From the NCBI GenBank assembly GCA_048013815.1, contig CM106586.1, forward strand, positions 9,548,001-9,612,000: a DNA stretch of 64,000 nucleotides. Reading direction: 5' to 3'. Below the pieces are notes generated by a model that saw only the letters and a program-made list of their open reading frames with translations, searched no databases and was not told where the DNA came from. Positions 9,395 to 46,445 of this stretch are shown piece by piece. The number at the start of each line of letters is the position of its first letter. The stretch's first letter is position 1. The position numbers were made by a program, and so were the translations under genes. The DNA comes from Setoptus koraiensis (Eukaryota; Animalia; Arthropoda).

Positions 9395-10360
9395 ATGCTG
9401 TCCAGCAAACTGTCATCGTTTCGCATCGTTATTGTTATTTTGAGCCTGCTCGTTCATCACATCGCCCAAACAACAGTCGCTGCGAATCCACTCGATTCGC
9501 TGTTGCAGGCACAGCAACAACAGTCCACCGAGGACGACACGGCTCCCCCCAGCGATTGCTACAACAGATGCGCCCAGCGACAAGATCATGCGCGCAAATT
9601 GATATCGGAACACAATCAAAAAATGGAACTTATTCCCAAGATCAATAACCGACCACAACAAGACAGAGTTCACAATAACAGGCCCAGAAACGCTAACAGA
9701 GACACACACAGTTATGCAGCAAATCGCGCTGCCGTCACCACCACCACAACTACAACCAGACGACCCAACCTGAGGGCGAATATTAATCAGAAAAGTCCAA
9801 AAAACAAGCCCATAACTAATTACAATCACAATGTTAAAGAAAGAGAGATATGTCATTCAGTCGATGCATTATTGGACTGTCTCAACTCTATTAAACAGGA
9901 TTGCAATGTTGATCTACAATTTCGTTCATCTTTAGCAGTTTGCAGACAATGGTCGTTTAAATTCAATTGTACCACTAGTCTGTTGGGAGTACCTGCTTCA
10001 AAAATAAAACCATTCGAGAATCTCATCAAATCCGCACCACCGTCACGAAACAAACAAAAGCACACTGCCAAACCAATAGATATAGAACCGGACCCGTTAG
10101 ATGATTTCAATCAAAGAATCCCATTCTCTTTGAGCAGGGTGCCAGAGACAAGGAGTTTCCGCACAATACAAAAACAAAAATTGGAATATAACTATACTCC
10201 ACCGAAAACAAGAGTCACGGGGCATCTGACCAAAATTTTGCCATCGCCTTATCAACAACATAAACCCACCACCAGTAACTCTAACCAGATACAAGTTCTT
10301 AATTCTTGCTTGTTCCTAGCTATGGTTCCAATGATAATCTCGCTCATGATATTGTCTTGA
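9395..10360 (+). CDS. Secreted, probably GPI-anchored protein with an RGM N-terminal-like domain (321 aa)
   Basis: N-terminal signal peptide and C-terminal hydrophobic tail. The motif C-x8-C-x7-C-x2-DL-x-FRSS-x11-NC has the spacing of the RGM_N domain. No GDPH or vWD region seen. Confidence 0.65.
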   Translation: MLSSKLSSFRIVIVILSLLVHHIAQTTVAANPLDSLLQAQQQQSTEDDTAPPSDCYNRCAQRQDHARKLISEHNQKMELIPKINNRPQQDRVHNNRPRNANRDTHSYAANRAAVTTTTTTTRRPNLRANINQKSPKNKPITNYNHNVKEREICHSVDALLDCLNSIKQDCNVDLQFRSSLAVCRQWSFKFNCTTSLLGVPASKIKPFENLIKSAPPSRNKQKHTAKPIDIEPDPLDDFNQRIPFSLSRVPETRSFRTIQKQKLEYNYTPPKTRVTGHLTKILPSPYQQHKPTTSNSNQIQVLNSCLFLAMVPMIISLMILS

Positions 10361-10546
10361 TGAGAAGGCAGGTTTGTTTGACACCACCAGACAAAAAGTG
10401 TGATAATATACACAAGAGTCCACAAGATGCTTGCGTATCTCACTGCTATTGATGCAACTATTTTTACTCAATTGTTATTTTTTGAATATTGGTTTTGTAA
10501 TGAAATAATAATATATAAATATATATAAATAAATCAAATATATCAG

Positions 10547-10741
10547 ATAATTGTTGCTGCTGCCATATGTACCGACTGGACTCTTGAATGTGGAGCATTC
10601 GGAATGTTCTGTAGATGCAGTAACGCGATCACACTCCGCATCGCTGATGTAACACTCCGATAGTTTCCTAGCAATCTCTCTATCAGCTACATTTCTTTGG
10701 TAATTCCTATCGTTGCCAGAGGCCGTCAAATGAGTTGCCTC
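10547..10741 (-). pseudogene. Diverged internal nicastrin fragment
   Basis: Translation THLTASGNDRNY...KLSECYISDAECDRVTASTEHS...PVGTYGSS aligns to TYLTAFGKDKNY...KLLECYLIDAECDLVTAATEHS...PVDTYDSS of the intact gene (~15705-15895). Same strand as the intact gene. Confidence 0.9.
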
Positions 10742-10799
10742 GTGAATTAACACATTTGGTTATCAGCCAAATAGTCTAGAGATAAAACTAAGAAAACAG

Positions 10800-11086
10800 T
10801 TTACTATGACATTAATCAACTAGCGGAATAGTACCTAGAGGCATGCATTGTGTGCATAAATTGTGTCAAAGGGATCACAGAACAGTTTGTCACTCGGTGT
10901 TTTATCGGCAGTAGCAATCAAGTTTTCAATCGATTGCAATGACCAACTTGCCTTCAGAATATTTAAATGAGCTTTTCTACAATTAATACATTGTAACAAC
11001 TTCGTTATTAGTTGAATGGTCAAGAAATAAAACTACAAAAATCGCTTTACTATGACATTGATCTACTCGCAGAATAGTACCTAGAG
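10800..11086 (+). repeat. 41-bp direct repeat pair (10800-10840 and 11046-11086) bracketing the Ago 3' relic
   Basis: TTTACTATGACATT(A/G)ATC(A/T)ACT(A/C)GC(G/A)GAATAGTACCTAGAG, 4 mismatches. Confidence 0.85.
10943..10986 (+). pseudogene. Copy of the last 13 codons plus stop of the Argonaute gene
   Basis: 10943-10982 is identical to 14729-14768 (40 bp); one mismatch follows, then the TAA is conserved. Confidence 0.9.
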
Positions 11087-11901
11087 ACAAACTTGGCTGA
11101 AAAAACGGAATTGTCTAGATTTTCTCTCGCTCTTTCTCTCCCCGAGTGATTTCTAGAAAGGTATCAAAAAATCACACTATCCATTCAAATCGCGCCCATT
11201 TCGTGGAGCTCTAGCATCACCATTGCTGGTTTGTCAAACTCTCTCTATGGGAGACGGATTCTGCTAGGCTTACGAAGAGGCACCTAGAGTGAGAATTGCC
11301 GATGTTCCAAATCGTACCTTGGAATATACGTTGCCGAATGACAGATTGCTGCAATATAAATTGTCAGGTCTAGAAGTTTCTGGAAAGATGAAAGAAAACA
11401 TATGCCAAGAGCTGCTCTGCATGTGTCATGTGATGAAAATATTGTCGATGTTAACCCTTCATTTACAGCATGTTAACGAAAGCAAGGCCATGTATCGCGT
11501 CACAATGAAAGAGATGACTCATAGCTACAGTTTATTAACAACAGTGTTACTTTTCAAATTTGGTGATTCATTTTTTTTTTCTGAATGCTAATCCTGGACA
11601 AACTCACTGTCCGATATTTAAAGCTGGCAACATGAATTTTATGAGCTTGTGCTATTCTTATACGTCTGTTGTTGTTGTTGTTGCGTTAGTAGGCGCGCCA
11701 CACATGAGAATCTCGTGACGAAATTCAGTTGATGTATAACACCGTAAGCGTTTCATCTGACGATATATATCCAATCAAGTCCTTAACTAATGCATTCCAA
11801 ACACAGCGAAATTCAGTGATAATCGATTAAACATCAATCAAATTATACTATTTCATAAGGGACATAATTACTGTCTCAATTATAAATAATATTCATTAAA
11901 T

Positions 11902-14772
11902 ATGGACCAAGCAACCTCCTCTTTAGCGCAGCTCTCTCTCAAGCGAACTGCAAAATTTCCAGCAAGGCCAAAGGCGCCTGCCAGGTTAGGTAGAGAAGTC
12001 AAGCTCATAGTGAATCTATTCAAGCTATCCTATAACACTAAGTGCCCCATCAAGAAATATCATGTGTCCGTGTTGCCGCCACCACGTTTGCCAAAACCGG
12101 GCGACAAAGAGAAACCTAGAGCAAGTGGCGACTCTGTCCGACCAACTGACACGCAAATCACAAAGAAAATTCCCCAAAAAATCAGTCGAGCTCTCGTTAG
12201 AAAAGCGCTGATTTGTCTAACCAAAGGTCCTCCGAAAATACAAATGGACGACTCAAAATATGTATACGACGGTATAGCCACAATCTACACGATTGTTGAT
12301 TTATTTGGACCGAGTGCTTCTAAGACAAACAATTGGTTTGAGGCACAAATTCCACACGAAGAGTTGACAATAGTGGACGGACGCATGGTTATGGCGTCTA
12401 AGAATTACACAGTGAAGATAGGCTATCATCAAATCAATGGTACCAACATCGACCTCAGCATGCTTGAGAAATATTGTCGGGGTGAGGCACTCGCAATAGA
12501 AGACGTGCAACCCGCTATTCAGGCCTTGAATGTTATCATCAGTTACAATATGGTTCTGTCGGGCAGATATGTAAGCATTCGCAGCAACATGTTCTGTCCG
12601 GATCCGAGAACAGATTTAGATTTGGGAAATGGAATCAAATTGAACACTGGCTTCTATTTGAGTGCCAGGCCGGCAAAATGTGGTATGCTGTTGAATGTTG
12701 CCAACTCAATCGCCGCGTTCTATGACGAATGCAATCTGGTCGACCTGCTCTGCCAGCGAGTGGCTTCGAAAAGGTTTCGGCGAGAAAATGAACAAGTCGA
12801 CGTCAAAACTGCCTTTATGGAAGCTCAAAAAGATAAAACTATATGGGACCAGTTCGAGGTTGATATTAAACACAAACAAGTAGAGGTTAGACACAAAGCG
12901 TATCCAGGTTCCAATCCTAGCGTCAAACACTATAGGAAAGTACGCGTACTTGGATTAGCCAGAGTTGACTCACAACAGTTGAAGTTTAATGAGGTTAACC
13001 ATGAAACAAAAGCTGTGAGAGAGACATCGGTTGAAGAATATCTCAAACGTGTGCATAACTATACTGTGAAATATCCAAAACTATTCTGTATTAAAGTTGG
13101 AAATCTTGAGCAGTTCTACCATCTGCCTATGGAAGTGGGCTGGTTGATAGAAAAGCAGCATTGCAAGAGAAGGTTTGATCCTAAGGAGACCGCTGAAATA
13201 ATAAGGAAAACCGCCACCAAGCCGGATGTCCACTTTGATAAAATAAATCGCAATGCTGCGGATATCAGGAATAGCGGAAAGAAAATTTACGAAACCTTTG
13301 GAATTAATATCGGTGCTGAGCCATTGCCAGTGAAAGGCAGGGAGCTTGAGCCAACAAGCTTGATGGGCAATAAATTAATCAAACCTTTTGATGGCGCTTA
13401 TAATATTAGAGACGGAATAAAGTTCTTCAATCCAGTTTCGATTACAAAATGGATGCTGGCCCTCTGCGCTCACGATCCCAAACGACCTGATCGCGACATA
13501 AAAGATAAAAATGACAAAGCGTGTGACCAGTTCCTGAAGAATTATTCGAGTGGCGCCAGATCATTAGGCATAGCGATACCTGCGCCGAATACGAGAATAA
13601 TATCTAGTGATAACTGGATGGACGATTCATTCTGGAAAGACAAATTCTTCCCTTTCTTAGAGAACAACGGATGTCAATACGTTCTTATTGTTTTGCCAGA
13701 ACAGGCTCAGCCAAGCCTGTATCAAACTATTAAATTTCTTGAAGCCAGCTCTGCCACCAGGATGAAAGGCAAGTTCATTAAAACGCAGTGTTTGAAGTTT
13801 GCTAACTTTAAAAAAGGCATAGGAATAGGAAGAGCACCCGATCTATCTCTTGTCACAAATTTGTGGTTGAAAGCCAATGAAAAGTTGGGAGGAAACAACT
13901 TCACTCTCAAAGCCAGCACTACACCAGGCATGTTCGATCCGAACAATTTATATCTGGGTATTGACGTGAGCCATCCAGCTCCCGCTGATAAGCTGTGCCG
14001 TTCGGTCGTGGCGGCGGTTGGCATGTGGGACATCACAGGTAAAGTGGGATACCACACTGTATTAAAAGTCCAAGAGACAAGAAATGAATCATCCGCTCAG
14101 AAAATCACCATTGAGCATGTGGATAAAGCAGCTGAGATGCTGGCCCTCATTGTGGAATCTTACAAGGCATCTAAGAAGTCTTACCCAAAGCATATCCTAA
14201 TTTTGAGAGACGGAGTATCAGAGGGTCAATTCAATATTGTGCATGACATCGAGCTTAATAAGATATTGACTTATGTGGGCAAATTGCCGGGAGCCGCCAA
14301 ACCTAAAGTGACCTATGTTGTTGTGCAGAAGCGTCACAAGATTCGCTTCAGGCTTGCACAACGCTCACAAAGGGATAAAGATGACAATATCCATCCAGGG
14401 ACCGTTGTCGACCAGGATATCATTCATCCGACCGATCATGATTTCTACCTGGCACCCCACAAAGCTATCCAAGGAACAAGTAGACCGGCCCACTACTACG
14501 CTTTGCACGATGAAAAAAATTACTCCCAGGATGATCTGCAGGAGATTAGTCACGCATTATGCTACATGTCTCCACGTTGCAATCGAGCCATATCTATCCC
14601 TGCTCCGGTATATCTGGCTGACTTGGCGGCTGAGAGAGGCCGTAATCTAGTGATCGCATGGGCAGCACGTTTCACAAGCAAAAGCCAGGGATCGAGCGAG
14701 AACATCAATGATCTCAACAAATTCTTCTCCAACTTGCCTTCAGAATATTTAAATGAGCTTTTCTACAACTAA
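11902..14772 (+). CDS. AGO: Argonaute, divergent AGO-clade (siRNA-type), intronless, 956 aa
   Basis: N-terminal FPARP..GREV.L.VN.F; PAZ domain; MID residues Y..K, TQC, LK.N.KLGG; PIWI motifs GIDVSHP, RDGVSEGQF, QKRH, GTSRPAHY, SIPAPVYLADLAAERGR. Confidence 0.97.
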   Translation: MDQATSSLAQLSLKRTAKFPARPKAPARLGREVKLIVNLFKLSYNTKCPIKKYHVSVLPPPRLPKPGDKEKPRASGDSVRPTDTQITKKIPQKISRALVRKALICLTKGPPKIQMDDSKYVYDGIATIYTIVDLFGPSASKTNNWFEAQIPHEELTIVDGRMVMASKNYTVKIGYHQINGTNIDLSMLEKYCRGEALAIEDVQPAIQALNVIISYNMVLSGRYVSIRSNMFCPDPRTDLDLGNGIKLNTGFYLSARPAKCGMLLNVANSIAAFYDECNLVDLLCQRVASKRFRRENEQVDVKTAFMEAQKDKTIWDQFEVDIKHKQVEVRHKAYPGSNPSVKHYRKVRVLGLARVDSQQLKFNEVNHETKAVRETSVEEYLKRVHNYTVKYPKLFCIKVGNLEQFYHLPMEVGWLIEKQHCKRRFDPKETAEIIRKTATKPDVHFDKINRNAADIRNSGKKIYETFGINIGAEPLPVKGRELEPTSLMGNKLIKPFDGAYNIRDGIKFFNPVSITKWMLALCAHDPKRPDRDIKDKNDKACDQFLKNYSSGARSLGIAIPAPNTRIISSDNWMDDSFWKDKFFPFLENNGCQYVLIVLPEQAQPSLYQTIKFLEASSATRMKGKFIKTQCLKFANFKKGIGIGRAPDLSLVTNLWLKANEKLGGNNFTLKASTTPGMFDPNNLYLGIDVSHPAPADKLCRSVVAAVGMWDITGKVGYHTVLKVQETRNESSAQKITIEHVDKAAEMLALIVESYKASKKSYPKHILILRDGVSEGQFNIVHDIELNKILTYVGKLPGAAKPKVTYVVVQKRHKIRFRLAQRSQRDKDDNIHPGTVVDQDIIHPTDHDFYLAPHKAIQGTSRPAHYYALHDEKNYSQDDLQEISHALCYMSPRCNRAISIPAPVYLADLAAERGRNLVIAWAARFTSKSQGSSENINDLNKFFSNLPSEYLNELFYN

Positions 14773-15277
14773 CATAGAATTATCCGCATCATTATGTAAG
14801 ATCATCCATGTGCTTCCTTTCGAAGGGAATATTGATAAAGAAATTGACCTGGTAAATATATATAGTGACTCGTTCTAGAGGAGGGCACAAAGTCTTGGGA
14901 CCAGTGAGTATCGTTGATAATTTATTGAGACGACTGATTGAGCGAGTAGAATTGATATGATATCTTTAATAAACAGACGCCTGCTGGAAGAGGAGGTAAA
15001 ACACACATGAAGTTCTACGTTCACCGTATTGTCGAGAATTGTTGAGAAACTAGATTCCATGCTGGATCTAGTCGAATTACAGAATATTCTATCGTTCTCT
15101 AGATTGATCCATCTACATAGATACTCTCATAGAATTGAAATAGTGTGACGAAATGATTCTGATTAATAGATGCTTCCAGTTTGAATGAGATCGTTTCTTG
15201 AATCCTGCCTCTCGCCACCAATCAGATTATCTTGATGGTGCTGATTGTCATTGAATATCACAGATAGTTATAATTGA

Positions 15278-17519
15278 TTATGTTGAGGAGGTTTGAGTCT
15301 GCTTGAGGATCGATTTTTGTGCAAAGTTCACGACAAAAAATGAGCATATAGTTAGAGTAAGTCCAGATATAAAAGTGGTCCACTCCAACATAGGACTGGG
15401 CTTGAAAAATAATCTTACTGGATTTCGAATGCTTCTATCACTTTCTGTCCATGTAGAAAATTCTCTGGCCATTGTTTCATTTTGTTCTACCTCTTCGTAT
15501 TGGAATGTTGGACTCAACGAAGGAGTCCTTAACACCTGGAACTTGATGCAAACACCATTCTCTGTTTTATCGTCTCCATTCACATAAATGTATCGATGGG
15601 TCAAACTTTTGGCGGACATATCCTCGCATTCTTTTGGTGTAATCTGTGGCTGTTTGTCGGCCAGAAAGTACGACAATAACAGCTGTGTTACAATTGAATT
15701 ATAGCTGCTATCATACGTGTCAACGGGACCCTTGAATATGGAACCCTTGGAATGTTCTGTAGCTGCAGTAACGAGATCACATTCCGCATCAATCAGGTAA
15801 CACTCCAATAGTTTCTTAACAATCTCTTTATCAGCAGCAATATTATCATAATTCTTATCCTTGCCAAATGCCGTCAAATAAGTTACTCTCGCAACAGCAG
15901 TAGTTATATTTGTTAAATGATCAACGAGCTTGTAATTTTCTGTTCTGTTGATATTGTTTCTGTCGTCATATATACTGTGGTAAAGCAAATTTGAATATTC
16001 TTTCTGGTGATTTGTCAATACTAGACCAGCAATCTCCTGATCTAATCTAAGAAACGATTGTATAGATGATGGTGGCAATGGCATCGCAGTGTCGGGTTTA
16101 ACAAAATTAACTAGTTGTGAGGTGTTAAAAGCGGATACAATATCGTTCAATTTGTTAGCAGTTCGATTGTAATTTAGAGGATCTGTGTGCATGAAAACGG
16201 ATCCTGCCGTGCCGGGGTATAAAGCGAGTTGGTTCAGCTCTATGATTGAGTCGACGCCTTTGAGATTGGTATTCTGTATAGATTCTTTGTCAACATTAAT
16301 CTTATAGTATCTGAATAACCTATCGGTCTTCATATCGTAGGCCATTCTTCCCGATCCGGTGTAGTCCAAGGACTCAGCATCAAATATAGCGAACGCTATA
16401 TTGCGGCCACTTTTTAAAACAGTGTCTGAATTTTTAAATTTGGCCAAGGTATCTGATACTGCAAGCAGAACCACCAAACCAGTAATCGCAGAGTCAGCTC
16501 CAGGCGATAGGTGATTGAAGAAACTCATGGAATCCATTCTGGTTGTGACCATCACAATAGATCGCTCACTCACAAGAGGTGTGCTATTTGCCGGTTTAAT
16601 ACCAACGGCATCTTTATAATATCCGAAAATGTTATTCTTATTTATTGGCCTACATCTTGAACTTTGTAATTGAAATATGTCATCTATGGTAGCTCGTCCA
16701 TATAGACAATAATCAGAATTACTTGCCGCTGACATGAAACTATCCAATTGAGCACTACACAGAGGGTAGTCCGATTGCTTGTTTGCTCCTCCTTGATTGT
16801 AATTGTGAGTTTCAAAACAATTCATGATTTCATCAACTGACTCTTTTTTAGTAATTAAGAAAATGGGAAATGGTATATCCTGGAAAAACAGGTCTGACGT
16901 GTCCGATTTGATTTGCCATGATTGTTTTTTGCAATTTCCGTAGTCACTGTCATTTGAATACAGTCCGGTGTGTTTATTAGGACAAGTTGAATCAGTGGAG
17001 AAAGGTTTGATTTCGTAGCCTTTGTCCTCTGTCATGTTCTGTTTGATTAGAATTACTCCGCTCACTCTAGCTGGATATGCCTGTTTGAACTTAAGTATGT
17101 TTGCAGAGGTGAATTGGCCACGGTTAAGAACCACTATGTAGGGAGGCGTGGGACCATTCGTAAGAACATGTTGGATGTCTTCTTCGCCATTGACAGTCCA
17201 AACTACTCCTACGTTTCCTCCAGGGTCTGAAGTACATCCAATCTGATGAGTTAAATTCAATCTTCTTGTGCAGTAGTAATCACTCTGTAAATTGATGTAT
17301 ATCTTTTCGTCCACCTTCTCGCTGGTTATCAGATTTGGGTCTGTAGGTGGAGAAAGTACAAAAAGGAAAAATTGTTAGTGATTGATGTGTATGATATTTG
17401 TTGCAACGGAGACTCCCACTGGTTACTAGATTCTACTAACCTAATAATAATATTAGAGTAACCAGAGACAGCAAAAGCATTGTGACAGTCGGTTGTTTTC
17501 TAATGAAGATGCCTGTCAT
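15278..17519 (-). CDS. nct: Nicastrin (gamma-secretase subunit); exon 1 17519-17441 (signal peptide), intron 17440-17341, exon 2 17340-15278
   Basis: KIYI...C.R.LN.THQIGC, PGADSAITG, FD.ESLDY.GS.RM.YDM, PLPPSS.Q.FL motifs and a C-terminal TM helix. GTTAGT donor and pyrimidine-CAG acceptor give a matching phase 1 junction. An alternative in-frame ATG lies at 17552. Confidence 0.95.
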
Positions 17520-18055
17520 TGGAATTGATCGGGGAGCAAGTATTCTAATCATGAAGGCAAACGTTGAGATTGAATAAGCTACTTGTCTAGTGTGATCTAT
17601 TGGGTGATGCATTAATTAAATATTTACTGTTTCATTAAATATTTTATTTTTTGGACTGCTCGCTCAGGCGTCTTCAAAAACCGACGAGCGTACGCGGATT
17701 TCGACGCAAGGGGGCGCCTTACCTATATTTACCGATTCGCAGATAACTACTCCTCATGATCGACTGCTATTCGTTTACACACATGCGAATGGCCACAAGC
17801 AACTAAGTGGCGCAATCTCGAAGGTGCATTGACGATGTGATGATCTCGCACCAGGGGTCGTCAAAAGCAATGCAGAACAGAGTCTGTTCAACAGACAGAT
17901 GATCACGTCGTCTTCAACATGTGATGTCGGTGAATGTTGTGAATGTTTAGATCTGTAAGGGCGCATTGGAAATTCGCGACCATTACATTCTGACTTAAGT
18001 ACCATATACCTTTATTTTTGACTTTTCAATTCTCTCTGAAGTTATCATTTACATC

Positions 18056-18550
18056 ATGAATATGGATTCAATGATCAAGCAACTCAAGGAAGCTGAGCAA
18101 ATAGCGGTAAGTCGATTAACGACACAATAATATACTTGATATCTAATAACAAAGTGATATTTAGAAAATAACTTTCCAATTTTCATACAGTCAACCGCTT
18201 TATTTCAGGCAAAACAAAAAATAGAGTTGATTAAAAAGGCCGATAACAGGCCAGTTTTTTCGGAGGAATTAATTAAATATGCGCACAATATTAGCTCCCA
18301 ACATAGTGTCGCTAGCCCCTATAATTGGGATGTTGGTGACCCTCGTCGACCATACCCCACTGATCTCCAAATGCGACAAAGCCTACTAAGTGGGCACAAC
18401 CCAACATCATTCGACTCATCACCTTTCCGCTTTATACCCACGGGTTTACCAGGGTCTGGGTCCACAAAGAAGGCAGCAAATATAGACGAGAAAGATGTTG
18501 ATCTCATGTCCACAGATTCATCTTCAAGCTCCTCCAGTGATAGTCAATAA
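18056..18550 (+). CDS. MED4: Mediator subunit 4 homologue; N-terminal ~100 aa not located; exons 18056-18106 and 18191-18550
   Basis: KQLKEAEQI | STALFQAKQK...SEELIKYAH.IS...W..GDPRRPYPTDL.MR matches MED4. 84-nt GTAAGT...CAG intron in phase 0. In-frame stop at 17996-17998 upstream. Confidence 0.8.
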
Positions 18551-18602
18551 TGAGATTGCCGTAGACCATCTAATACTAGCTTGGCGACTTCATACCACCA
18601 GG

Positions 18603-19275
18603 GCCATTGCCACCATCATCTATACAATCGTTTCTTAGATTAGATCAGGAGATTGCTGGTCTAGTATTGACAAATCACCAGAAAGAATATTCAAATTTGC
18701 TTTACCACAGTATATATGACGACAGAAACAATATCAACAGAACAGAAAATTACAAGCTCGTTGATCATTTAACAAATATAACTACTGCTGTTGCGAGAGT
18801 AACTTATTTGACGGCATTTGGCAAGGATAAGAATTATGATAATATTGCTGCTGATAAAGAGATTGTTAAGAAACTATTGGAGTGTTACCTGATTGATGCG
18901 GAATGTGATCTCGTTACTGCAGCTACAGAACATTCCAAGGGTTCCATATTCAAGGGTCCCGTTGACACGTATGATAGCAGCTATAATTCAATTGTAACAC
19001 AGCTGTTATTGTCGTACTTTCTGGCCGACAAACAGCCACAGATTACACCAAAAGAATGCGAGGATATGTCCGCCAAAAGTTTGACCCATCGATACATTTA
19101 TGTGAATGGAGACGATAAAACAGAGAATGGTGTTTGCATCAAGTTCCAGGTGTTAAGGACTCCTTCGTTGAGTCCAACATTCCAATACGAAGAGGTAGAA
19201 CAAAATGAAACAATGGCCAGAGAATTTTCTACATGGACAGAAAGTGATAGAAGCGTTCGAAATCCAGTGAGGTAG
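18603..19275 (+). pseudogene. Near-identical inverted partial copy of nicastrin CDS (666 bp), lacking start, signal peptide and TM helix
   Basis: 18603-19268 is the reverse complement of 15417-16082. The translations differ at one residue (I>V) and spot-checked stretches are identical. The frame ends at TAG 19273-19275. Confidence 0.95.
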
Positions 19276-19282
19276 AGTCAAT

Positions 19283-19705
19283 ATAATCTGATTGGTGGCG
19301 AGGGGCAGAATTCAAAAAACGATCTAATTCAGTAGGAAGTATCTATCTATCGAGATCATTTCGTCGCAAAATTTCAATCTCATGGGAGTATCTAGCTGGA
19401 TCAGTCTAAAGAACAATCGAACATTCTGTTCTTCGACTAGAGCCAGCTTGGAATCTAGTTTCTCAACGATTCTCGACAATACGGTGAACGGAGAACAATA
19501 CGGTGTGTTTTGCCTCCTCTTCCAGCTGGCGTCTGTTTATTAAAGATATCATGTCAATTCAACTCGATCAATCATTAGTGTCAATACAGTATAAGCGATG
19601 CTCACTGGTTTCAAGAATTCGTGCAATCTTTCAGAACGATTTGCTAAATAGCAGATCCAATCAATTTACATAGATGATCCTACTTAATGTTACAGATCAT
19701 TCTAT
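19283..19705. repeat. Older inverted copy of the Ago-nicastrin intergenic/3' UTR region (14774-15230)
   Basis: Colinear reverse-complement match, e.g. GGAATCTAGTTTCTCAAC.ATTCTCGACAATACGGTGAACG and CCTCCTCTTCCAGC.GGCGTCTGTTTATTAAAGATATCAT. Roughly 80-85% identity by eye. Confidence 0.9.
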
Positions 19706-20430
19706 TGGATTAGCGAAGCATAGTTGAGCATATCGTTTCGTCAGACTAAGCCCTGTGTTTTTATTCGATAGACGTTGAATGGTTGAGTTGTGATTTCATT
19801 ACGAATTTTGTCCCACCAACTAAACTGTTGTCCACATACCGGATAAGTTTTATTCCTCTACTACAGGAGGTGATGATATTATCAGAATCAACTAAAGACG
19901 ATTCTATATTCTATTCATAAGGTGGATTCAAGGTTAAAGGCTCTCTCAGCTTAAATAAATCACAGCACTTTATATCCGGCATGAAGCTTTCGGCTGTAGA
20001 TCGTTTTCGAGGTATTTTTGATTGTTGACGATAGTGATGATAGAAAAAACATAAGGGAAAACATTTCAGCGGAGGAAATTCATTAAATACTAACTTTGGT
20101 CATAAACTGGTCACACGATTCTGTTAAGTTTCACCATGATAAGTTAATCCAGATATTTGTCAGTTGCCTGTTTATTGAGTTGATTTCAAAGATTATCCGA
20201 GAATAAATAGTGAGAAAGATATCGCACTATCATTGGCTTTTTAAATGCAACAGCAAGTTGAAACATACGAATCTCAACATAGGTTTTGATCAGTATAAAA
20301 AGTGTTGTGAACTCACCATTCTCTTATTCACTACCAACTTCATTCTGTTGGAAAATAGCTAAAGTTGATTGCCAAGCTAACGTAATAATATTTCAGTCGA
20401 GCAAAGGATTTTCAGTGTCAATTGATTAAG

Positions 20431-21303: not shown

Positions 21304-23096
21304 CTACATAAATTCTGATTGGTGAATCAATTGCCGCTCCAAATAAATTATTAGGGATAGTGGGAGTGAATTTTTAGGAATTCGATTGAATAGTGTCTTG
21401 TTTCTGGTAATCGTGAGTCGGGCTAGATGTTTGAGATCGGGAGCCCTCTTGAAATGCTCCACATGAGTATCTATGGCATTTCTGTTTCGATTTGAAGTAT
21501 TTTCACCCATATTGATGCTTATATCACGAGGATTCCTAGAAGATCTGATCCATTCGCAGCATCTCAGAAACCGCTCATCGGTGGATAGAGCCAATCCAAG
21601 ATCATCGCAGCCGTTTGTCAACAGGATTCGCATAGAGGTAAGCTTGTATGATATATCAGTGATATCTGTTCTCTTCATCAAACAGTAGAATGGCGTCCTC
21701 ATTTTAGCATCGGTGGCATCGGGATCAGCCCCATTGTCCAACAACAGTTCTATGAAATGAGTCAAGTCTTTTTCGCTTATGGACAAGACACAATAATGCA
21801 GGGCAGTGCGTCCGAAAGCGTTTTTTGTATTGATTAGAGAAGTGCTGTAATCTGGTTGCATGAGCATTTTCACTTTGCCTGAACTATTTATATGACTCAT
21901 TTTTTTTGCTATTGCCTTAGCTTCGGGAGATATCCTTGCCATATCATTGCTATCGTTCGTATCTGATGGAGACTGACTAGTTTTTACTGCTTCCTGGCAA
22001 GATTTCAAACTATCAGGCATGATGAGAGGATCCAAAATGTCTTCATGACGATCTACTTGATATAAAAGTTTATCAGAGATGCTCAGAGACTTTTCGGTGA
22101 GATTTTCATCATTTATATTGTTATTAGCATCCTTGTTCACGATTGACGTAGATTTGGGAAAAAATTGCTTCAGGTTAGCTTTATCCGCATCCAGGAGTAA
22201 TCGGATAATACTTGAGAGATTCTTCTTTACCATGAGACCTGACTCTGGTGGTAGAGCGCCGTTCCTATACGATTGTATGGCGATATGCAAAGCAGTGTTT
22301 CCAGCGTAATCTCGAAGTCTAACGCCAACATTGTTTATTGTTAATACTTTAACCAACTCAACATCTAAGTAGTATGCAGACATGTGCAATAATGTACGGC
22401 CATAACTATCAAGTCTAACGTCAATGTCAATGAGTTTGTTTTCTATTAGCTTGAATAAGAGTTGACGTCGAGAAGTTCGGAGATAACATTGTTCAATGAG
22501 CAGTTTGGCAACTTGCTGTTTATGATCCCATATATCGTTTTGGTATAGATTCTATAGGAAGAAAAAGATTTACAGGTTAAATTCGATGTTAGTGCGCCAT
22601 TCAAGGCTCAGATAAGTATGCGAGGAATTCAATGCAACACTTACGGCTATATGATTGACAAGTTGGTCGTATCTCTGCTCAACAACTAATTCGATAATTT
22701 CCTGTTTTTGATAAACTCCAATATGCCTACTAAAGCTTTGGCAGTAGAATTGTAGCTGTGATATAAAATCAAAACTACCGTCAATAAAGTTCGTTATCAA
22801 CATGATGGCTTACAGACGTTCAGAACAGTGTTTAATTCAATGTGACGTCCAATGTTGTCGAAAATCTCCGATTCATCAACTCTTTTGTACCTTGAGTTGG
22901 AAAAGAATGTTGAGTTAGTAGGTAGTATGAATTGTGAATGATTTCTGAATGATATTGTTTTAGAAATACCGAGGATCCCCAGAATGTTTTTCAAACCGCT
23001 TGCGAGAGACCGGTAACTTGGTGTACTTACTTTGGTGTTTTTTACGTCGGAGTAATTAATGAGTGGAAACCATTTTTTGCTTCCTATAATGTCCAA
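21304..23096 (-). CDS. Ankyrin-repeat and SOCS-box protein (ASB-like); main exon 22551-21304, probable upstream exons 22755-22645 and 23096-22818
   Basis: Ankyrin motifs GRTLLH, GNTALHIA, GRTALH, GADPDA, RTPF; C-terminal PDLKHLARL.I...LP..L..YL SOCS box. Intron 22644-22552 has GTAAGT, a CTAAC branch point and TAG. The 5'-most exon junction is uncertain. Confidence 0.8.
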
Positions 23097-43931: not shown

Positions 43932-44079
43932 ATGCAATATTGCATCGTGTTTGCATTGTTTACAAAACGAATATGCAATCACCTGACCTACAGTTTACTA
44001 TATAGCGCGCCTAATTCGAACTCAACAAATTAGACCAATTTATTTGGTAACCTGCTGTTGTAGACAATTTAGAAAGAAA
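43932..44079 (+). repeat. Deleted duplicate of the MKK3/6 upstream region: 43932-44048 = 46096-46212 (117 bp, 2 mismatches), then 44054-44079 = 46537-46562
   Basis: Direct alignment; the second piece includes the MKK intron-1 acceptor. Confidence 0.92.
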
Positions 44080-44399
44080 TAACTTTATTCAATTATTGCA
44101 GTTATCACCAGTTCTTGATATATATTTATATTTTTACCCCGGATGAACTAATCGAGCATAAGTTTTCTTCTCTTATATACTAGTTAATATATATTACTTT
44201 TGACTCATTCCTAACGGATCAGCGAACGCCGAGGCCATATTCGGTGGAGCTGTTTGAGATGATAGAGAGTAGAGTGAAAGAATTGATTTCTTTGTCAATA
44301 CTTTCTTGGTTGCGTTACTACCAGCTCCGCCTAGTTGTCCAGTTTTATTAAACTTTGGTTCCAAATTTTTGTAACCAAAGTTTGAATATCATAAATCGT

Positions 44400-45377
44400 T
44401 AAGATCGGCCGATGTAGATGGCGACAGTAAAGGTGACTGCGAGTTATACAAAGTTTGGTCATTACAGAATGCACCAAATAGATCTTCACTCGGACTAACT
44501 GTTGTCGCGATCGCGGTAGCTACCACCGGATTGTTGTTACTTGGCTGGCTTACGGAAGCGTTTTAATTTTAAAATTTTCAAAAAGATCTACTGCTTCGTT
44601 TGCTGGTCTTGTTGCTGCCGCTGAAACACTATTACTGCCAGTGTGAAGATTAAATAAGTCCAACAATGGATTATTGGTGTCAACCTTGTTTCTTTTACTA
44701 TTGTTGGTATTATCGTTATTCGTATAATTGTTGGCCACAACAGTTGCCGCAACAGTGCTGAATCTTATCTGATTTGGTGCAGCAGTGATTTGCCCAAGTT
44801 AAATTCTATCTTTGGATGCTGTTCCTGATGGTGATTGTTGTTGTTCGGTAGGGCGAGGCTGAGATATTTTGCTAGATGGCAACTCTTAGATCAATGAGGC
44901 TCCTACGCTGCCGCTGCTCTTCGTAGTTCGTCTTCCACGTCGAAGGCGGGCTCTGGTGGTCCTAGATCCATCCAGCCCTGGGCAATGTATTTTTTTAATT
45001 CGTATTTAGCTCGTACAAAAGTTTCTAAGCTTGTGTCTGGTTGTGGTCTGCGGAAATCATCGGGTAGATTGGCCTCATAGATTGCCCTGGCCCTGCTATT
45101 GCCCATACTTTATAATGTAAGCGACGTGTTCCGGTCTCCATGAGTCCACATGGACGAATTTCACTTTTGAGATGTGAACGCCCACATTTCTGTGAATGCC
45201 CGCGCTAGAATGAACAAAAATATGCCCGAATTTCCAGAGGCCCAACGGGGTCCTTTGGCGTCACAATCAACACAATATTTGTTGTCTTCATCTTTTAGTA
45301 GTACCTCAATAAGAGATTGTCACTTATCGTTGATGATCTTTTGTCTTTCCTTGTCCGATTTTGATTGAACCGTTTTC
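44400..45377 (-). pseudogene. SMAP: SMAP1/2-type ArfGAP pseudogene
   Basis: LLKDEDNKYCVDCDAKGPRWAS, GIHRNVGVHISKVK, MGNSRARAIYEANLPDDFRRP..D.SLE.FVRAKYE.KKY. In-frame TGA at 45320-45322, frameshifts near 45190 and 45107, and further stops downstream. The 3' boundary is approximate. Confidence 0.88.
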
Positions 45378-45494
45378 CTAAATGTATAACAATTACCTGT
45401 CAATATGTATTGAATGGGGCTATAGTGGATCTGCAACAATAAATACAAGCTATACTGGTTCTACTAGTATAAGAGCGCTTAATTTTAATTATCT

Positions 45495-45958
45495 AGGCAT
45501 CTAGTAGGTTTCATCGTCCTAAATTCATTTAAGTAAAAAGTCTAGACCAACATCCAGCGCCTTCAAAGATACCATTGAACCTTTGGTTGAACTCAGGAAG
45601 CAAAGTGGAAGAGCGCCACAAGTGACCAATTACATTCGATTGAGTCCTCTTTCCTGGACGCCTTCACATATCAAATGAAAATCATGTTGGAGCATTACTA
45701 CAGACACAAAAGGAGTCATCACCGCAGATAATGGGTCTTTCGAACTAGCTTTGTGACGGACGAAACAACATTGTCCGTCCCCATAGAGGATGAATCCACT
45801 CGTGTCTATAGTGATGCTCTGACATGATTTTCATCTGATATGTTCCACTTTGCTTCCTGGTTTTAACCACAGGTTCAACGGTATCTTTGGAGGCGCTGGA
45901 TGTTGGTCTAGACTTTTTACTTAGATGAATTTGGAACGATGAAACCTACTAGATGCCT
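45495..45958. repeat. 464-nt foldback: left arm 45495-45610 plus 45667-45707 pairs with right arm 45802-45958
   Basis: Hand alignment gives 157 bp of arm with 14 substitutions, a 56-nt unpaired insert in the left arm and a 94-nt loop. Confidence 0.92.
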
Positions 45959-46445
45959 CGCGACTCCTCCACTGTGCTAATTTTTCCTAGAAAAAAATAG
46001 CACTGATTTGTTCTGTCACGAGAATAAACGTAGTCAATAATCACCAACCAATTGAGCGCTAATAATTAAAATTAAGCGCTAATAATAACAGTCTTATGCA
46101 ATATTGCATCGTGTTTGCATCGTTTACAAAACGAATATGCAATCACCTGACCTACAGTTTACGATATAGCGCGCCTAATTCGAACTCAACAAATTAGACC
46201 AATTTATTTGGTGTGCACTCATGATGCAACAGATTATGCTAATTAGAGGAAAATATCCATCACCGAGCTGCATAATGCGGTTTTTGATGTCCAGACCAAG
46301 AAACGGGAAGACAAAAAAAACGTCGATATCAATATACAATAGATGTCTAGTCAGATAAATGTTGTTTTGTCCACGTTAGTGAATAATCAAGACAGCACCA
46401 CTTACAATAGTTTGTTTGCATCACGCAAGCGATTTATAGTTCGCC

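What the first reader, a model, noticed from the sequence alone, without database searches (positions are those of the whole stretch)
11902..19705. Argonaute sits inside a nested set of inverted duplications that could feed it dsRNA
Seen: Ago (+) and nicastrin (-) are convergent. A 666-bp nicastrin CDS segment (15417-16082) recurs inverted and near-identical at 18603-19268. It is followed by an inverted copy of the Ago 3' flank (14774-15230 at 19283-19705). The copy begins 53 nt after the MED4 stop with no AATAAA in between. Known: long near-perfect inverted repeats are Dicer substrates and a source of endo-siRNA/hpRNA in arthropods. Inference: (i) a transcript crossing both arms folds into a ~0.67-kb duplex targeting nicastrin (gamma-secretase/Notch); (ii) MED4 read-through would carry sequence antisense to the Ago 3' UTR. 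Together this could be a cis-encoded RNAi circuit acting on nicastrin and on Ago itself. I cannot tell from sequence whether any transcript spans both arms.
Basis: partly seen in the sequence, partly recalled or inferred. Interest (0 to 1): 0.8.

Follow-up and report, generated by a model that had tools for sequence, protein, structure and literature searches.

The report
Rearrangement scar: inverted nicastrin copy in MED4 3'UTR
The inverted, near-identical copy of part of the nicastrin gene is real, but it is best read as a scar of a local chromosome rearrangement kept identical by gene conversion and now transcribed as the tail of the neighbouring MED4 message in the sense orientation, so nothing yet shows that it feeds an RNA-interference circuit.

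Summary
Observation confirmed. Arms 15414-16082 and 18603-19271 are inverted copies (669 nt, 2 mismatches at the outer edge, 652 nt exact). They are followed by a flank copy about 82% identical, and 178 nt (TM helix, stop) are missing from the copy. It is not an assembly artefact: unitigs of an independent run give all four junctions and double depth on the shared tract.

The organism is an eriophyoid mite. A sister species has one nicastrin and no copy within its contig. There MED4 is convergent with a gene whose window orthologue is at 9395-10360. In the window that junction is split, and each side now abuts a nicastrin fragment (10549-10747 and 18603-19271), mutually inverted. This is the signature of a breakpoint-associated duplication. 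The jump from 100% to 82% identity fits arm-to-arm gene conversion. The scan noted similar palindromes elsewhere in this genome.

An RNA-type run (spliced contigs) has one contig running from the MED4 coding end through the whole copy to 19503. The only poly(A) hexamer downstream is at 19539. On that strand the copy is nicastrin sense, so it cannot pair with nicastrin mRNA. No RNA bridging both arms and no small-RNA data were available. The RNAi circuit is unsupported, not refuted.

The parts
9395..10360 (+). Gene X (321-aa ORF, no clear family). Its 3' flank runs to 10544. It is the ancestral convergent neighbour of MED4.
   Evidence: sister-species contig L022 759-1828 matches window 10544-9482 (72.8%, inverted), directly after MED4 (L022 222-730); a 328-aa convergent gene is called there.
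10549..10747 (-). Old nicastrin fragment (aa 474-539). It has the same orientation as the gene, is inverted relative to the copy at 18603-19271, and abuts the end of gene X homology.
   Evidence: 79% nt to both arms; inverted pair I2. (tblastn, 59% aa, E 4e-19).
10943..10986 (+). 44-nt copy of the last 14 Ago codons plus the stop (98%). Homology ends exactly at the stop codon.
11902..14772 (+). Argonaute gene: AGO clade, single ORF of 956 aa.
   Evidence: Piwi 2e-65, PAZ, ArgoN, ArgoL1. (human Ago2 5e-79; PIWI proteins only about 1e-19). (paralogue at C2:17.63 Mb, 65% aa).
14773..15235 (.). Left flank: shared Ago / nicastrin 3'UTR region. Ago AATAAA is at 14968 (+). Nicastrin signals are ATTAAA at 14970 and AATAAA at 14926 (-).
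   Evidence: RNA-type contigs begin at 14893 (X7) and 14898 (X11), as expected for a nicastrin poly(A) end.
15236..15413 (-). Nicastrin TM helix, stop codon and first 42 nt of the 3'UTR. Present only in the gene and deleted from the copy.
15414..16082 (-). Left arm: nicastrin codons for about aa 411-633, within the functional gene (15278-17340, plus a first exon to the right of 17441).
   Evidence: The intron 17341-17440 is seen as a CT..AC joint in X7.
18056..18550 (+). MED4: exon 1 18056-18106, intron 18107-18190, exon 2 18191-18550.
   Evidence: Med4 1.3e-12. (GT..AG joint 18105/18190, cut +1). (94% to the sister-species MED4).
18551..18602 (.). 52-nt junction between the MED4 stop and the copy. 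Homology with the sister species ends at 18551, so this is a rearrangement breakpoint.
   Evidence: unique in the genome.
18603..19271 (+). Right arm: inverted nicastrin copy, which is nicastrin sense on the + strand. It is transcribed contiguously with the MED4 coding end.
   Evidence: (X7 contig 18522-19503; X2 repeat unitig at depth 204 against 100-121 in the flanks).
19278..19705 (+). Right flank: diverged copy (about 82%) of the nicastrin 3'UTR / Ago 3' flank.
19539..19544 (+). ATTAAA, the only poly(A) hexamer within 1.35 kb downstream of the MED4 stop. It lies in the 25-nt longest exact block shared by the two flanks.
   Evidence: X7 coverage stops in bin 19368-19551.
21311..21383 (+). 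Fourth piece homologous to the poly(A) region of the nicastrin 3'UTR, now the last codons of the ankyrin-repeat ORF (21304-22389, -). It shares indels with the sister species rather than with the two flanks.

Best explanation
The inverted repeat is a genuine two-copy structure left by a local rearrangement in this mite lineage. SHOWN: the ancestral junction 'gene X -> <- MED4', kept in a sister species, is broken in the window. INFERRED: the break most simply reflects an inversion of about 8 kb (10.55-18.60 kb) made by staggered breaks, or a replication template-switch event. Either would copy the 3' part of nicastrin plus its 3'UTR to the breakpoints. More than one event is likely. SHOWN: the copy lost 178 nt (TM helix and stop), and its flank is about 18% diverged. 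INFERRED from the identity pattern: the 652-nt coding tract has been re-homogenised by gene conversion between the two arms, with the functional gene as the selected template. SHOWN by an RNA contig: the break cut MED4 off 52 nt after its stop codon, and transcription now runs on through the copy. INFERRED: MED4 is polyadenylated at the inherited nicastrin signal (ATTAAA at 19539), giving a 3'UTR of about 1 kb made of nicastrin sense sequence. No RNAi function is needed to explain any feature.
For: The repeat is real; in run X2 (a different study from the probable source sample) the k-mer contigs are 14739-15460, the shared tract 15431-16082, 16053-18632, 19225-19505 and 19476 onward. The shared tract has depth 204 against 81-121 for its neighbours. 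X4 gives the same pieces.

The duplication is derived and younger than the species split; the closest relative (nicastrin 84% aa, contig L020) has one nicastrin and no second copy within 1.86 kb upstream or 7.4 kb downstream; the two flanks are 81.7% alike, but only 65% and 62% like the relative's flank.

There is a breakpoint; in L022/L023, MED4 (= window 18063-18551) is followed after 28 nt by gene X (= window 10544-9482, inverted). In the window, nicastrin fragments start 4 nt beyond the gene X homology (10549) and 52 nt beyond the MED4 homology (18603), and they are mutually inverted (I2). PMC1885836 reports inverted duplications of single-copy sequence at 17 of 29 Drosophila inversions and proposes staggered breaks. 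No repeated element sits at the junctions.

Gene conversion. There are 0 mismatches in 652 nt, where about 120-135 would be expected at the 18-21% divergence of the flank and of the third fragment. The two mismatches lie in the last 17 nt next to the 178-nt heterology. Two other palindromes with homogenised tracts were noted in this genome.

MED4 3'UTR. X7 has contigs spliced at the MED4 and nicastrin introns, zero depth over 17712-17895 and 19552-19900, and one contig spanning 18522-19503. ATTAAA at 19539 is the only signal downstream.
Against: Polarity rests on one sister species. More distant eriophyoids have other neighbours for both MED4 and nicastrin, so there is no outgroup.

A single inversion does not explain everything. 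Homology with the relative also ends between 17609 and 18062. The duplication boundary coincides with the Ago stop codon. A 44-nt Ago tail copy and a fourth 3'UTR piece also exist.

Gene conversion is inferred from the identity pattern only. Co-variation of the two arms between strains could not be checked, because X7 has no contig on the native arm.

X7 is 'RNA' by its spliced contigs, not by its record. Contigs give neither strand nor transcript ends. Short-read contigs cannot phase the orientation of the 2.5-kb spacer.
Confidence: 0.66

Rival explanations
1. One reading: the inverted repeat is a cis-encoded RNAi device. One RNA crossing both arms folds into a duplex of about 0.65 kb that Dicer cuts into siRNAs against nicastrin. 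MED4 read-through supplies antisense to the Ago 3'UTR.
For: The arms would pair completely if they were on one RNA (669/669 pairs in register, MFE -1944 kcal/mol). The genome encodes about 10 Piwi-domain proteins and at least 3 Dicer-sized RNase III ORFs. The copy is transcribed. hpRNAs in Drosophila arise from inverted fragments of their targets, sometimes one gene away (PMC10317233).
Against: The transcribed strand that is linked to MED4 carries nicastrin sense. No RNA contig bridges the arms, and X7 has no depth at 17712-17895. The 2.5-kb 'loop' contains the nicastrin 5' half, a bidirectional promoter and MED4. A + strand RNA must ignore AATAAA at 14968 and four ATTAAA hexamers. A - strand RNA must pass eight such hexamers. 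Complementarity to the Ago 3'UTR is limited to about 25-45 nt. The structure is explained by a rearrangement, and similar palindromes occur elsewhere in the genome. The 25-nt exact block in the flanks is not longer than chance allows (about p 0.3 by my estimate).
Confidence: 0.06
2. Two separate duplications rather than gene conversion. An old inverted copy (flank, 82%) was later overwritten or joined by a very recent second copy of the 669-nt coding segment.
For: This would produce the same two-tier identity pattern. The locus clearly has a history of repeated events.
Against: It needs a new copy to land precisely in register with the old one. The inner boundary of the identical tract coincides with the old breakpoint. 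The outer boundary stops 17 nt short of the old 178-nt deletion, which is what a conversion tract bounded by heterology would do.
Confidence: 0.12
3. Assembly artefact: a chimeric or fold-back read created a false inverted copy.
For: Near-perfect inverted copies a few kb apart are a typical artefact class. All laid runs are contigs, not raw reads.
Against: Independent studies reproduce all four junction contigs, with double depth on the shared tract. The adjoining flank is 18% diverged and carries a 178-nt deletion, which an artefact would not produce. A transcript contig from another strain crosses both copy-specific junctions, with its own SNPs and a 19-nt indel.
Confidence: 0.02
4. The copy has a sense-strand function. 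One option is a shared 3'UTR that puts MED4 and nicastrin under the same post-transcriptional regulators. The other is a translated TM-less nicastrin fragment (open 222-codon frame 18607-19275).
For: The copy is transcribed with MED4. The frame is open. The poly(A) block is the best conserved part of the flank.
Against: The open frame is uninformative because the tract is identical to the gene. It is out of frame with MED4 and has no evident start. No protein of that size class exists in the protein collection. Conservation of the poly(A) block is within chance.
Confidence: 0.08

Closest known systems
Inverted duplications at inversion breakpoints (staggered-break model; Ranz et al. 2007, PMC1885836)
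   Same: Ancestrally single-copy genic sequence is present in inverted orientation at both sides of a broken ancestral gene junction. The duplicates are partly decayed (about 79-82% here, about 88% on average in Drosophila). There is no transposable element at the junctions. Breakpoints appear to be reused.
   Different: The scale is only about 8 kb, in a 49-Mb mite genome. One duplicate overlaps the still-functional parent gene and has been re-homogenised. Extra fragments (Ago tail, fourth 3'UTR piece) suggest a more complex or multi-step event. Polarity rests on one sister species.
Gene-conversion-maintained palindromes (for example sex-chromosome palindromes and organelle inverted repeats; from general knowledge)
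   Same: Arm-to-arm identity is far above that of adjacent sequence from the same duplication. Identity drops sharply where the homology is interrupted.
   Different: The arms are very short (0.65 kb) with a 2.5-kb spacer containing two promoters. One arm is an exon of an essential gene, so selection on that arm probably sets the direction of conversion. Concerted evolution was not shown directly.
Drosophila hairpin-RNA (hpRNA) loci (PMC10317233)
   Same: A long near-perfect inverted repeat derived from a protein-coding gene and located next to it. The organism has an Argonaute and Dicer repertoire.
   Different: hpRNA loci are discrete transcription units holding both arms, and they are defined by Dicer-2-dependent siRNAs. 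Here one arm is the target gene's own exon and the other is the neighbour's 3'UTR in sense orientation. No spanning transcript or small RNA is known.
Convergent overlapping 3'UTRs (cis-natural antisense pairs)
   Same: Ago (+) and nicastrin (-) end within the same 505-nt spacer. Their poly(A) signals imply an overlap of about 90 nt (14895-14990).
   Different: This concerns the native pair only and is independent of the duplication. The overlap is inferred from hexamers and contig ends, not from stranded RNA.

Membership tests
hpRNA / endo-siRNA hairpin locus | Long, near-perfect inverted repeat | tested here: met
   669 nt at 99.7%, with 652 nt exact.
hpRNA / endo-siRNA hairpin locus | Both arms lie in one transcription unit (a single primary transcript) | tested here: inconclusive
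   RNA-type contigs join the right arm to MED4 only. None bridges 16083-18602, and depth is 0 at 17712-17895. Contigs drop rare molecules and cannot show absence.
hpRNA / endo-siRNA hairpin locus | Dicer-dependent 20-23-nt small RNAs of both polarities from the arms | not testable with these tools
   no small-RNA or raw-read run was offered.
hpRNA / endo-siRNA hairpin locus | The transcribed arm is antisense to the target mRNA | tested here: not met
   the copy reads nicastrin sense on the + strand, the strand of MED4 with which it is contiguous in RNA contigs. The strand itself is inferred from the MED4 linkage and the GT..AG intron.
Breakpoint-associated inverted duplication (staggered-break inversion) | Gene order differs from a close relative exactly at the duplicate's boundary | tested here: met
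   L022 has MED4 -> <- gene X. Window homology ends at 18551 and at 10544.
Breakpoint-associated inverted duplication (staggered-break inversion) | Inverted duplicates of the same sequence at both co-occurring breakpoints | tested here: met
   (I2): 10549-10736 against 18801-18988, 79% complementary.
Breakpoint-associated inverted duplication (staggered-break inversion) | The sequence is single-copy in the non-rearranged relative | tested here: inconclusive
   there is no second nicastrin piece in the 11.8-kb contig L020 or in L022/L023. The relative's whole genome could not be searched.
Breakpoint-associated inverted duplication (staggered-break inversion) | Not caused by dispersed repeats at the breakpoints | tested here: met
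   the junction sequences and the duplicates have no other copies in the 48.8-Mb genome.
Gene-conversion-maintained palindrome | Arm identity far above that of flanking sequence of the same duplication, with a sharp edge at a heterology | tested here: met
   100% over 652 nt against 81.7% in the flank. The mismatches lie in the last 17 nt before the 178-nt deletion.
Gene-conversion-maintained palindrome | Concerted evolution: the same substitutions in both arms across strains or species | not testable with these tools
   strain X7 shows two substitutions in the right arm (18848, 19156) but has no contig on the native arm.

The most novel reading that the evidence does not exclude
The palindrome is a nascent hairpin-RNA locus in a mite, in which an essential gene's own exon is one arm. 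Occasional read-through (Ago sense, or antisense from the right) would yield a 0.65-kb dsRNA. Its siRNAs would hit both nicastrin and the MED4 3'UTR, coupling gamma-secretase and Mediator dosage to the activity of the adjacent Argonaute.
Probability: 0.05. Interest if true: 0.7.

Novelty: new member of a known kind. Interest (0 to 1): 0.3.

Why it matters
This is a well-resolved small example of how a micro-rearrangement in a streamlined arthropod genome duplicates gene fragments at its breakpoints. It shows how gene conversion can then keep a fragment identical to its parent exon. It also shows how a gene cut off from its own 3' end (MED4) can take over the 3'UTR and poly(A) signal of another gene. 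It gives a caution as well: a striking inverted repeat beside an Argonaute gene is not evidence for an RNAi circuit. The 652-bp identical inverted arms could also mediate flip-flop inversion of the spacer. That would yield a nicastrin lacking its TM helix, so the locus may be a site of structural instability that long reads could check.

Tried and rejected
Transposon or gene-capture origin: rejected. Own-genome searches found no further copies of the repeat, of the junctions, or of 10748-11901.

Loose ends at 18558/18589 in X2 and X4 looked like a repeat at the junction. The genome has no second copy, so they come from other DNA in those runs.

First synteny idea: that the copy is the in-situ remnant of nicastrin next to the ankyrin gene, based on a 73-nt match to the relative. 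This was weakened, which shows that piece is a fourth paralogous fragment of the 3'UTR poly(A) region.

Selection on the 25-nt exact block around the poly(A) signal: not claimed. A run of that length in about 460 columns at 80% identity is expected by chance about one time in three (my estimate).

Search for proteins the size of the 222-aa fragment: none found.

RdRP search in the genome: no hit, but the control was uninformative.

Distant eriophyoid contigs (L021, L024, L025) share no neighbours with the window, so they cannot polarise the rearrangement.

The joined MED4 exon 1 + exon 2 protein was not built or searched. Only exon 2 was searched, by reference.
Full report
OBSERVATION

- Arms 15414-16082 and 18603-19271 are reverse complements over 669 nt with two mismatches.
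- The mismatches sit at 15416 and 15430, so 652 nt (15431-16082) are exactly identical.
- Outside the arm the copy lacks native 15236-15413, which holds the nicastrin transmembrane helix, the stop codon and the first 42 nt of the 3'UTR.
- The copy then continues as a diverged copy of the Ago-nicastrin spacer. 14859-15235 matches 19650-19278 at 81.7%. MAFFT extends this to 14774 / 19705 across a roughly 29-nt indel.
- Pfam identifies 11902-14772(+) as an Argonaute, 15278-17314(-) as nicastrin and 18227-18550(+) as Med4.
- The Argonaute belongs to the AGO clade: human Ago2 scores 5e-79, PIWI proteins only about 1e-19.

- A third nicastrin fragment lies at 10549-10747. It is 79% identical in nucleotides and 59% in amino acids, and has the same orientation as the gene.
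- A 44-nt copy of the Ago CDS end including the stop lies at 10943-10986 (98%).
- A 73-nt piece at 21311-21383 is homologous to the poly(A) region of the nicastrin 3'UTR.

None of these sequences occurs elsewhere in the 48.76-Mb, two-contig genome.

IS IT AN ARTEFACT?

No. The stretch 14400-19900 is held by runs of six studies. I laid four runs on it.

In X2, from a different study than the probable source sample, the contigs are those a k=31 graph gives for a true two-copy inverted repeat.

- 14739-15460 is the outer left piece.
- 15431-16082 is the shared tract, at depth 204.
- 16053-18632 is the whole spacer, entering both arms by 30 nt, at depth 121.
- 19225-19505 and 19476 onward are the outer right pieces, at depths 81-101.

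X4 gives the same pieces. The 18% diverged flank and the 178-nt deletion are also not what a chimeric read would produce.

One caveat applies. Short-read contigs cannot phase the orientation of the 2.5-kb spacer. The assembled orientation is the one that keeps nicastrin full-length.

ORGANISM AND RELATIVES

Nicastrin is 42% identical to Aceria tosichella nicastrin, and the other hits are unnamed Logan or ENA proteins at similar distance. The genome is therefore that of an eriophyoid mite.

The closest relative has 84% amino-acid identity and sits on an 11.8-kb Logan contig, L020.

- That contig has one nicastrin gene.
- It has no second nicastrin piece within 1.86 kb upstream or 7.4 kb downstream.
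- It has neither Ago nor MED4.

In a three-way alignment the two window flanks are 81.7% alike. They are only 65% and 62% like the relative's flank. The duplication is therefore younger than the species split.

A SYNTENY BREAK AT THE REPEAT

MED4 exon 2, searched by reference, has a 94% identical homologue in the same sister species. Its genomic contigs L022 and L023 retain the intron.

In L022, MED4 (222-730) corresponds to window 18063-18551. After 28 nt it is followed by a convergent 328-aa gene (759-1828). That gene corresponds to window 10544-9482 in inverted orientation, which is the ORF 9395-10360(+) and its 3' flank.

In the window this junction is split.

- Gene X homology ends at 10544, and the old nicastrin fragment starts at 10549.
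- MED4 homology ends at 18551, and the nicastrin copy starts at 18603.
- The two nicastrin pieces are inverted relative to each other (pair I2).

Inverted duplications of ancestrally single-copy sequence at both ends of a rearranged segment, with no dispersed repeat at the junctions, are the pattern Ranz et al. described for 17 of 29 Drosophila inversions. They attributed it to staggered breaks (PMC1885836).

The simplest reading is an inversion of about 8 kb (10.55-18.60 kb). This polarity and mechanism are inferred. The more distant eriophyoid contigs have different neighbours, so there is no outgroup.

More than one event is needed.

- Homology with the relative also ends between 17609 and 18062.
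- The duplication boundary coincides with the Ago stop codon.
- The Ago tail copy and the fourth 3'UTR piece remain unexplained.

A replication-based template-switching event would fit equally well.

WHY 100% NEXT TO 82%?

At the divergence of the flank (18%) or of the third fragment (21%), about 120-135 differences would be expected in 652 nt. None is seen.

- The inner edge of the identical tract is the old breakpoint.
- The outer edge stops 17 nt before the 178-nt heterology.
- Those 17 nt carry the only two mismatches.

This is the footprint of a gene-conversion tract bounded by non-homology. Purifying selection on the functional exon probably makes it the effective donor.

Concerted evolution could not be tested directly. 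Strain X7 differs from the reference at 18848 and 19156 in the right arm, but it has no contig on the native arm. Earlier notes of this scan describe two other palindromes in this genome with near-identical tracts and decayed parts. Conversion between inverted copies therefore seems a general property of this genome.

TRANSCRIPTION

X7 behaves as an RNA run.

- Its contigs skip 18106-18189, the GT..AG MED4 intron.
- They also skip 17341-17440, a CT..AC joint that is a minus-strand intron of nicastrin.
- Depth is zero over 17712-17895 and 19552-19900.

One 1001-nt contig runs from 18522, which is 26 nt before the MED4 stop codon (18548), through the whole copy and on to 19503. It carries five substitutions and a 19-nt tandem insertion relative to the reference.

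The only AATAAA or ATTAAA within 1.35 kb downstream of the MED4 stop is ATTAAA at 19539. It is the inherited counterpart of the nicastrin signal at 14970.

I infer that MED4 lost its own 3' end at the breakpoint and now uses a 3'UTR of about 1 kb built from nicastrin sequence. Strand and ends are inferred, because contigs show neither.

CONSEQUENCES FOR THE RNAi IDEA

Orientation matters. The copy is nicastrin sense on the + strand, so the MED4 transcript cannot pair with nicastrin mRNA.

Complementarity to the Ago 3'UTR is small.

- Ago has AATAAA at 14968, so its 3'UTR probably ends near 14990.
- The complementary stretch begins at about 19528.
- It would cover only about 25-45 nt before the MED4 poly(A) site.
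- The rest of the flank is 82% identical, with a longest exact run of 25 nt.

A single RNA holding both arms would fold as predicted, with 669/669 pairs. Making such an RNA is difficult on either strand.

- A + strand RNA must read through the Ago poly(A) signal and four further hexamers.
- A - strand RNA must run antisense through MED4 and the promoter region, past eight hexamers.

No contig supports either route.

The machinery is present: about 10 Piwi-domain genes and at least three Dicer-sized RNase III ORFs. No small-RNA or raw-read run was available. The circuit is therefore unsupported rather than refuted. I give it about 5-6%.

One point is independent of the duplication. The native Ago and nicastrin 3'UTRs probably overlap by about 90 nt. 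Contigs in X7 and X11 begin at 14893 and 14898, and the Ago signal is at 14968. This makes an ordinary convergent antisense pair.

COMPARISON AND VERDICT

The locus works like, and meets the tested criteria of, a breakpoint-associated inverted duplication whose coding tract is homogenised by gene conversion. It fails one defining feature of an hpRNA locus, because the transcribed arm is sense. Two other hpRNA features are untested.

It is a new instance of known processes. It has modest interest as a clean case of 3'UTR capture and as a potentially unstable palindrome around an essential gene.

Procedural notes: the joined MED4 exon model was not built or searched.

Noticed in passing
window 14893-14990: The Ago (+) and nicastrin (-) 3'UTRs probably overlap by about 90 nt. 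Ago AATAAA is at 14968. Nicastrin AATAAA is at 14926 on the minus strand. RNA-type contigs begin at 14893 and 14898. This is a native convergent antisense pair, independent of the duplication.
   Followed up: partly
window 21304-21383: The last 25 or so codons of the ankyrin-repeat ORF (21304-22389, -) are homologous to the poly(A) region of the nicastrin 3'UTR. They resemble the sister species' version, sharing its indels, more than the two window flanks do. This is either an ancient overlap of convergent genes or a coding end recruited from UTR sequence.
   Followed up: partly
window 10748-11089: Two direct 96-nt repeats (10748-10843 and 10994-11089, 79%) bracket the 44-nt Ago tail copy. Homology of that tail copy and of the flank duplication both end exactly at the Ago stop codon (14772/14773), which suggests a further breakpoint there.
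   Followed up: partly
window 17626-17740: Several contigs of X2 and X4 branch off here, with loose ends at 17626-17664 and a 78-nt skip from 17660 to 17739. The genome has a 74% match at C2:1394116-1394216. This looks like a short dispersed element in the nicastrin-MED4 promoter region, where homology with the sister species also ends.
   Followed up: partly
window 19475: Strain X7 carries a 19-nt tandem duplication (unit acaatacggtgaacggaga) in the MED4 3'UTR / right flank, relative to the reference.
   Followed up: no
window 45495-45958 and 43932-46212: A foldback with 116-nt arms (92%, 232-nt loop) lies between two 117-nt direct repeats (43932-44048 and 46096-46212, 98%). It is possibly a small mobile element.
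   Followed up: no
window 61867-63660: A tandem duplication with a spacing of about 1.37 kb (61867-62286 against 63244-63660, 81-93%).
   Followed up: no
G000:C2:17635786-17636658 (L016): The window's Argonaute has one close paralogue (65% aa, 1146-aa ORF), 8 Mb away. Both are far from the other roughly 8 Piwi-domain genes (about 28-33% aa).
   Followed up: partly
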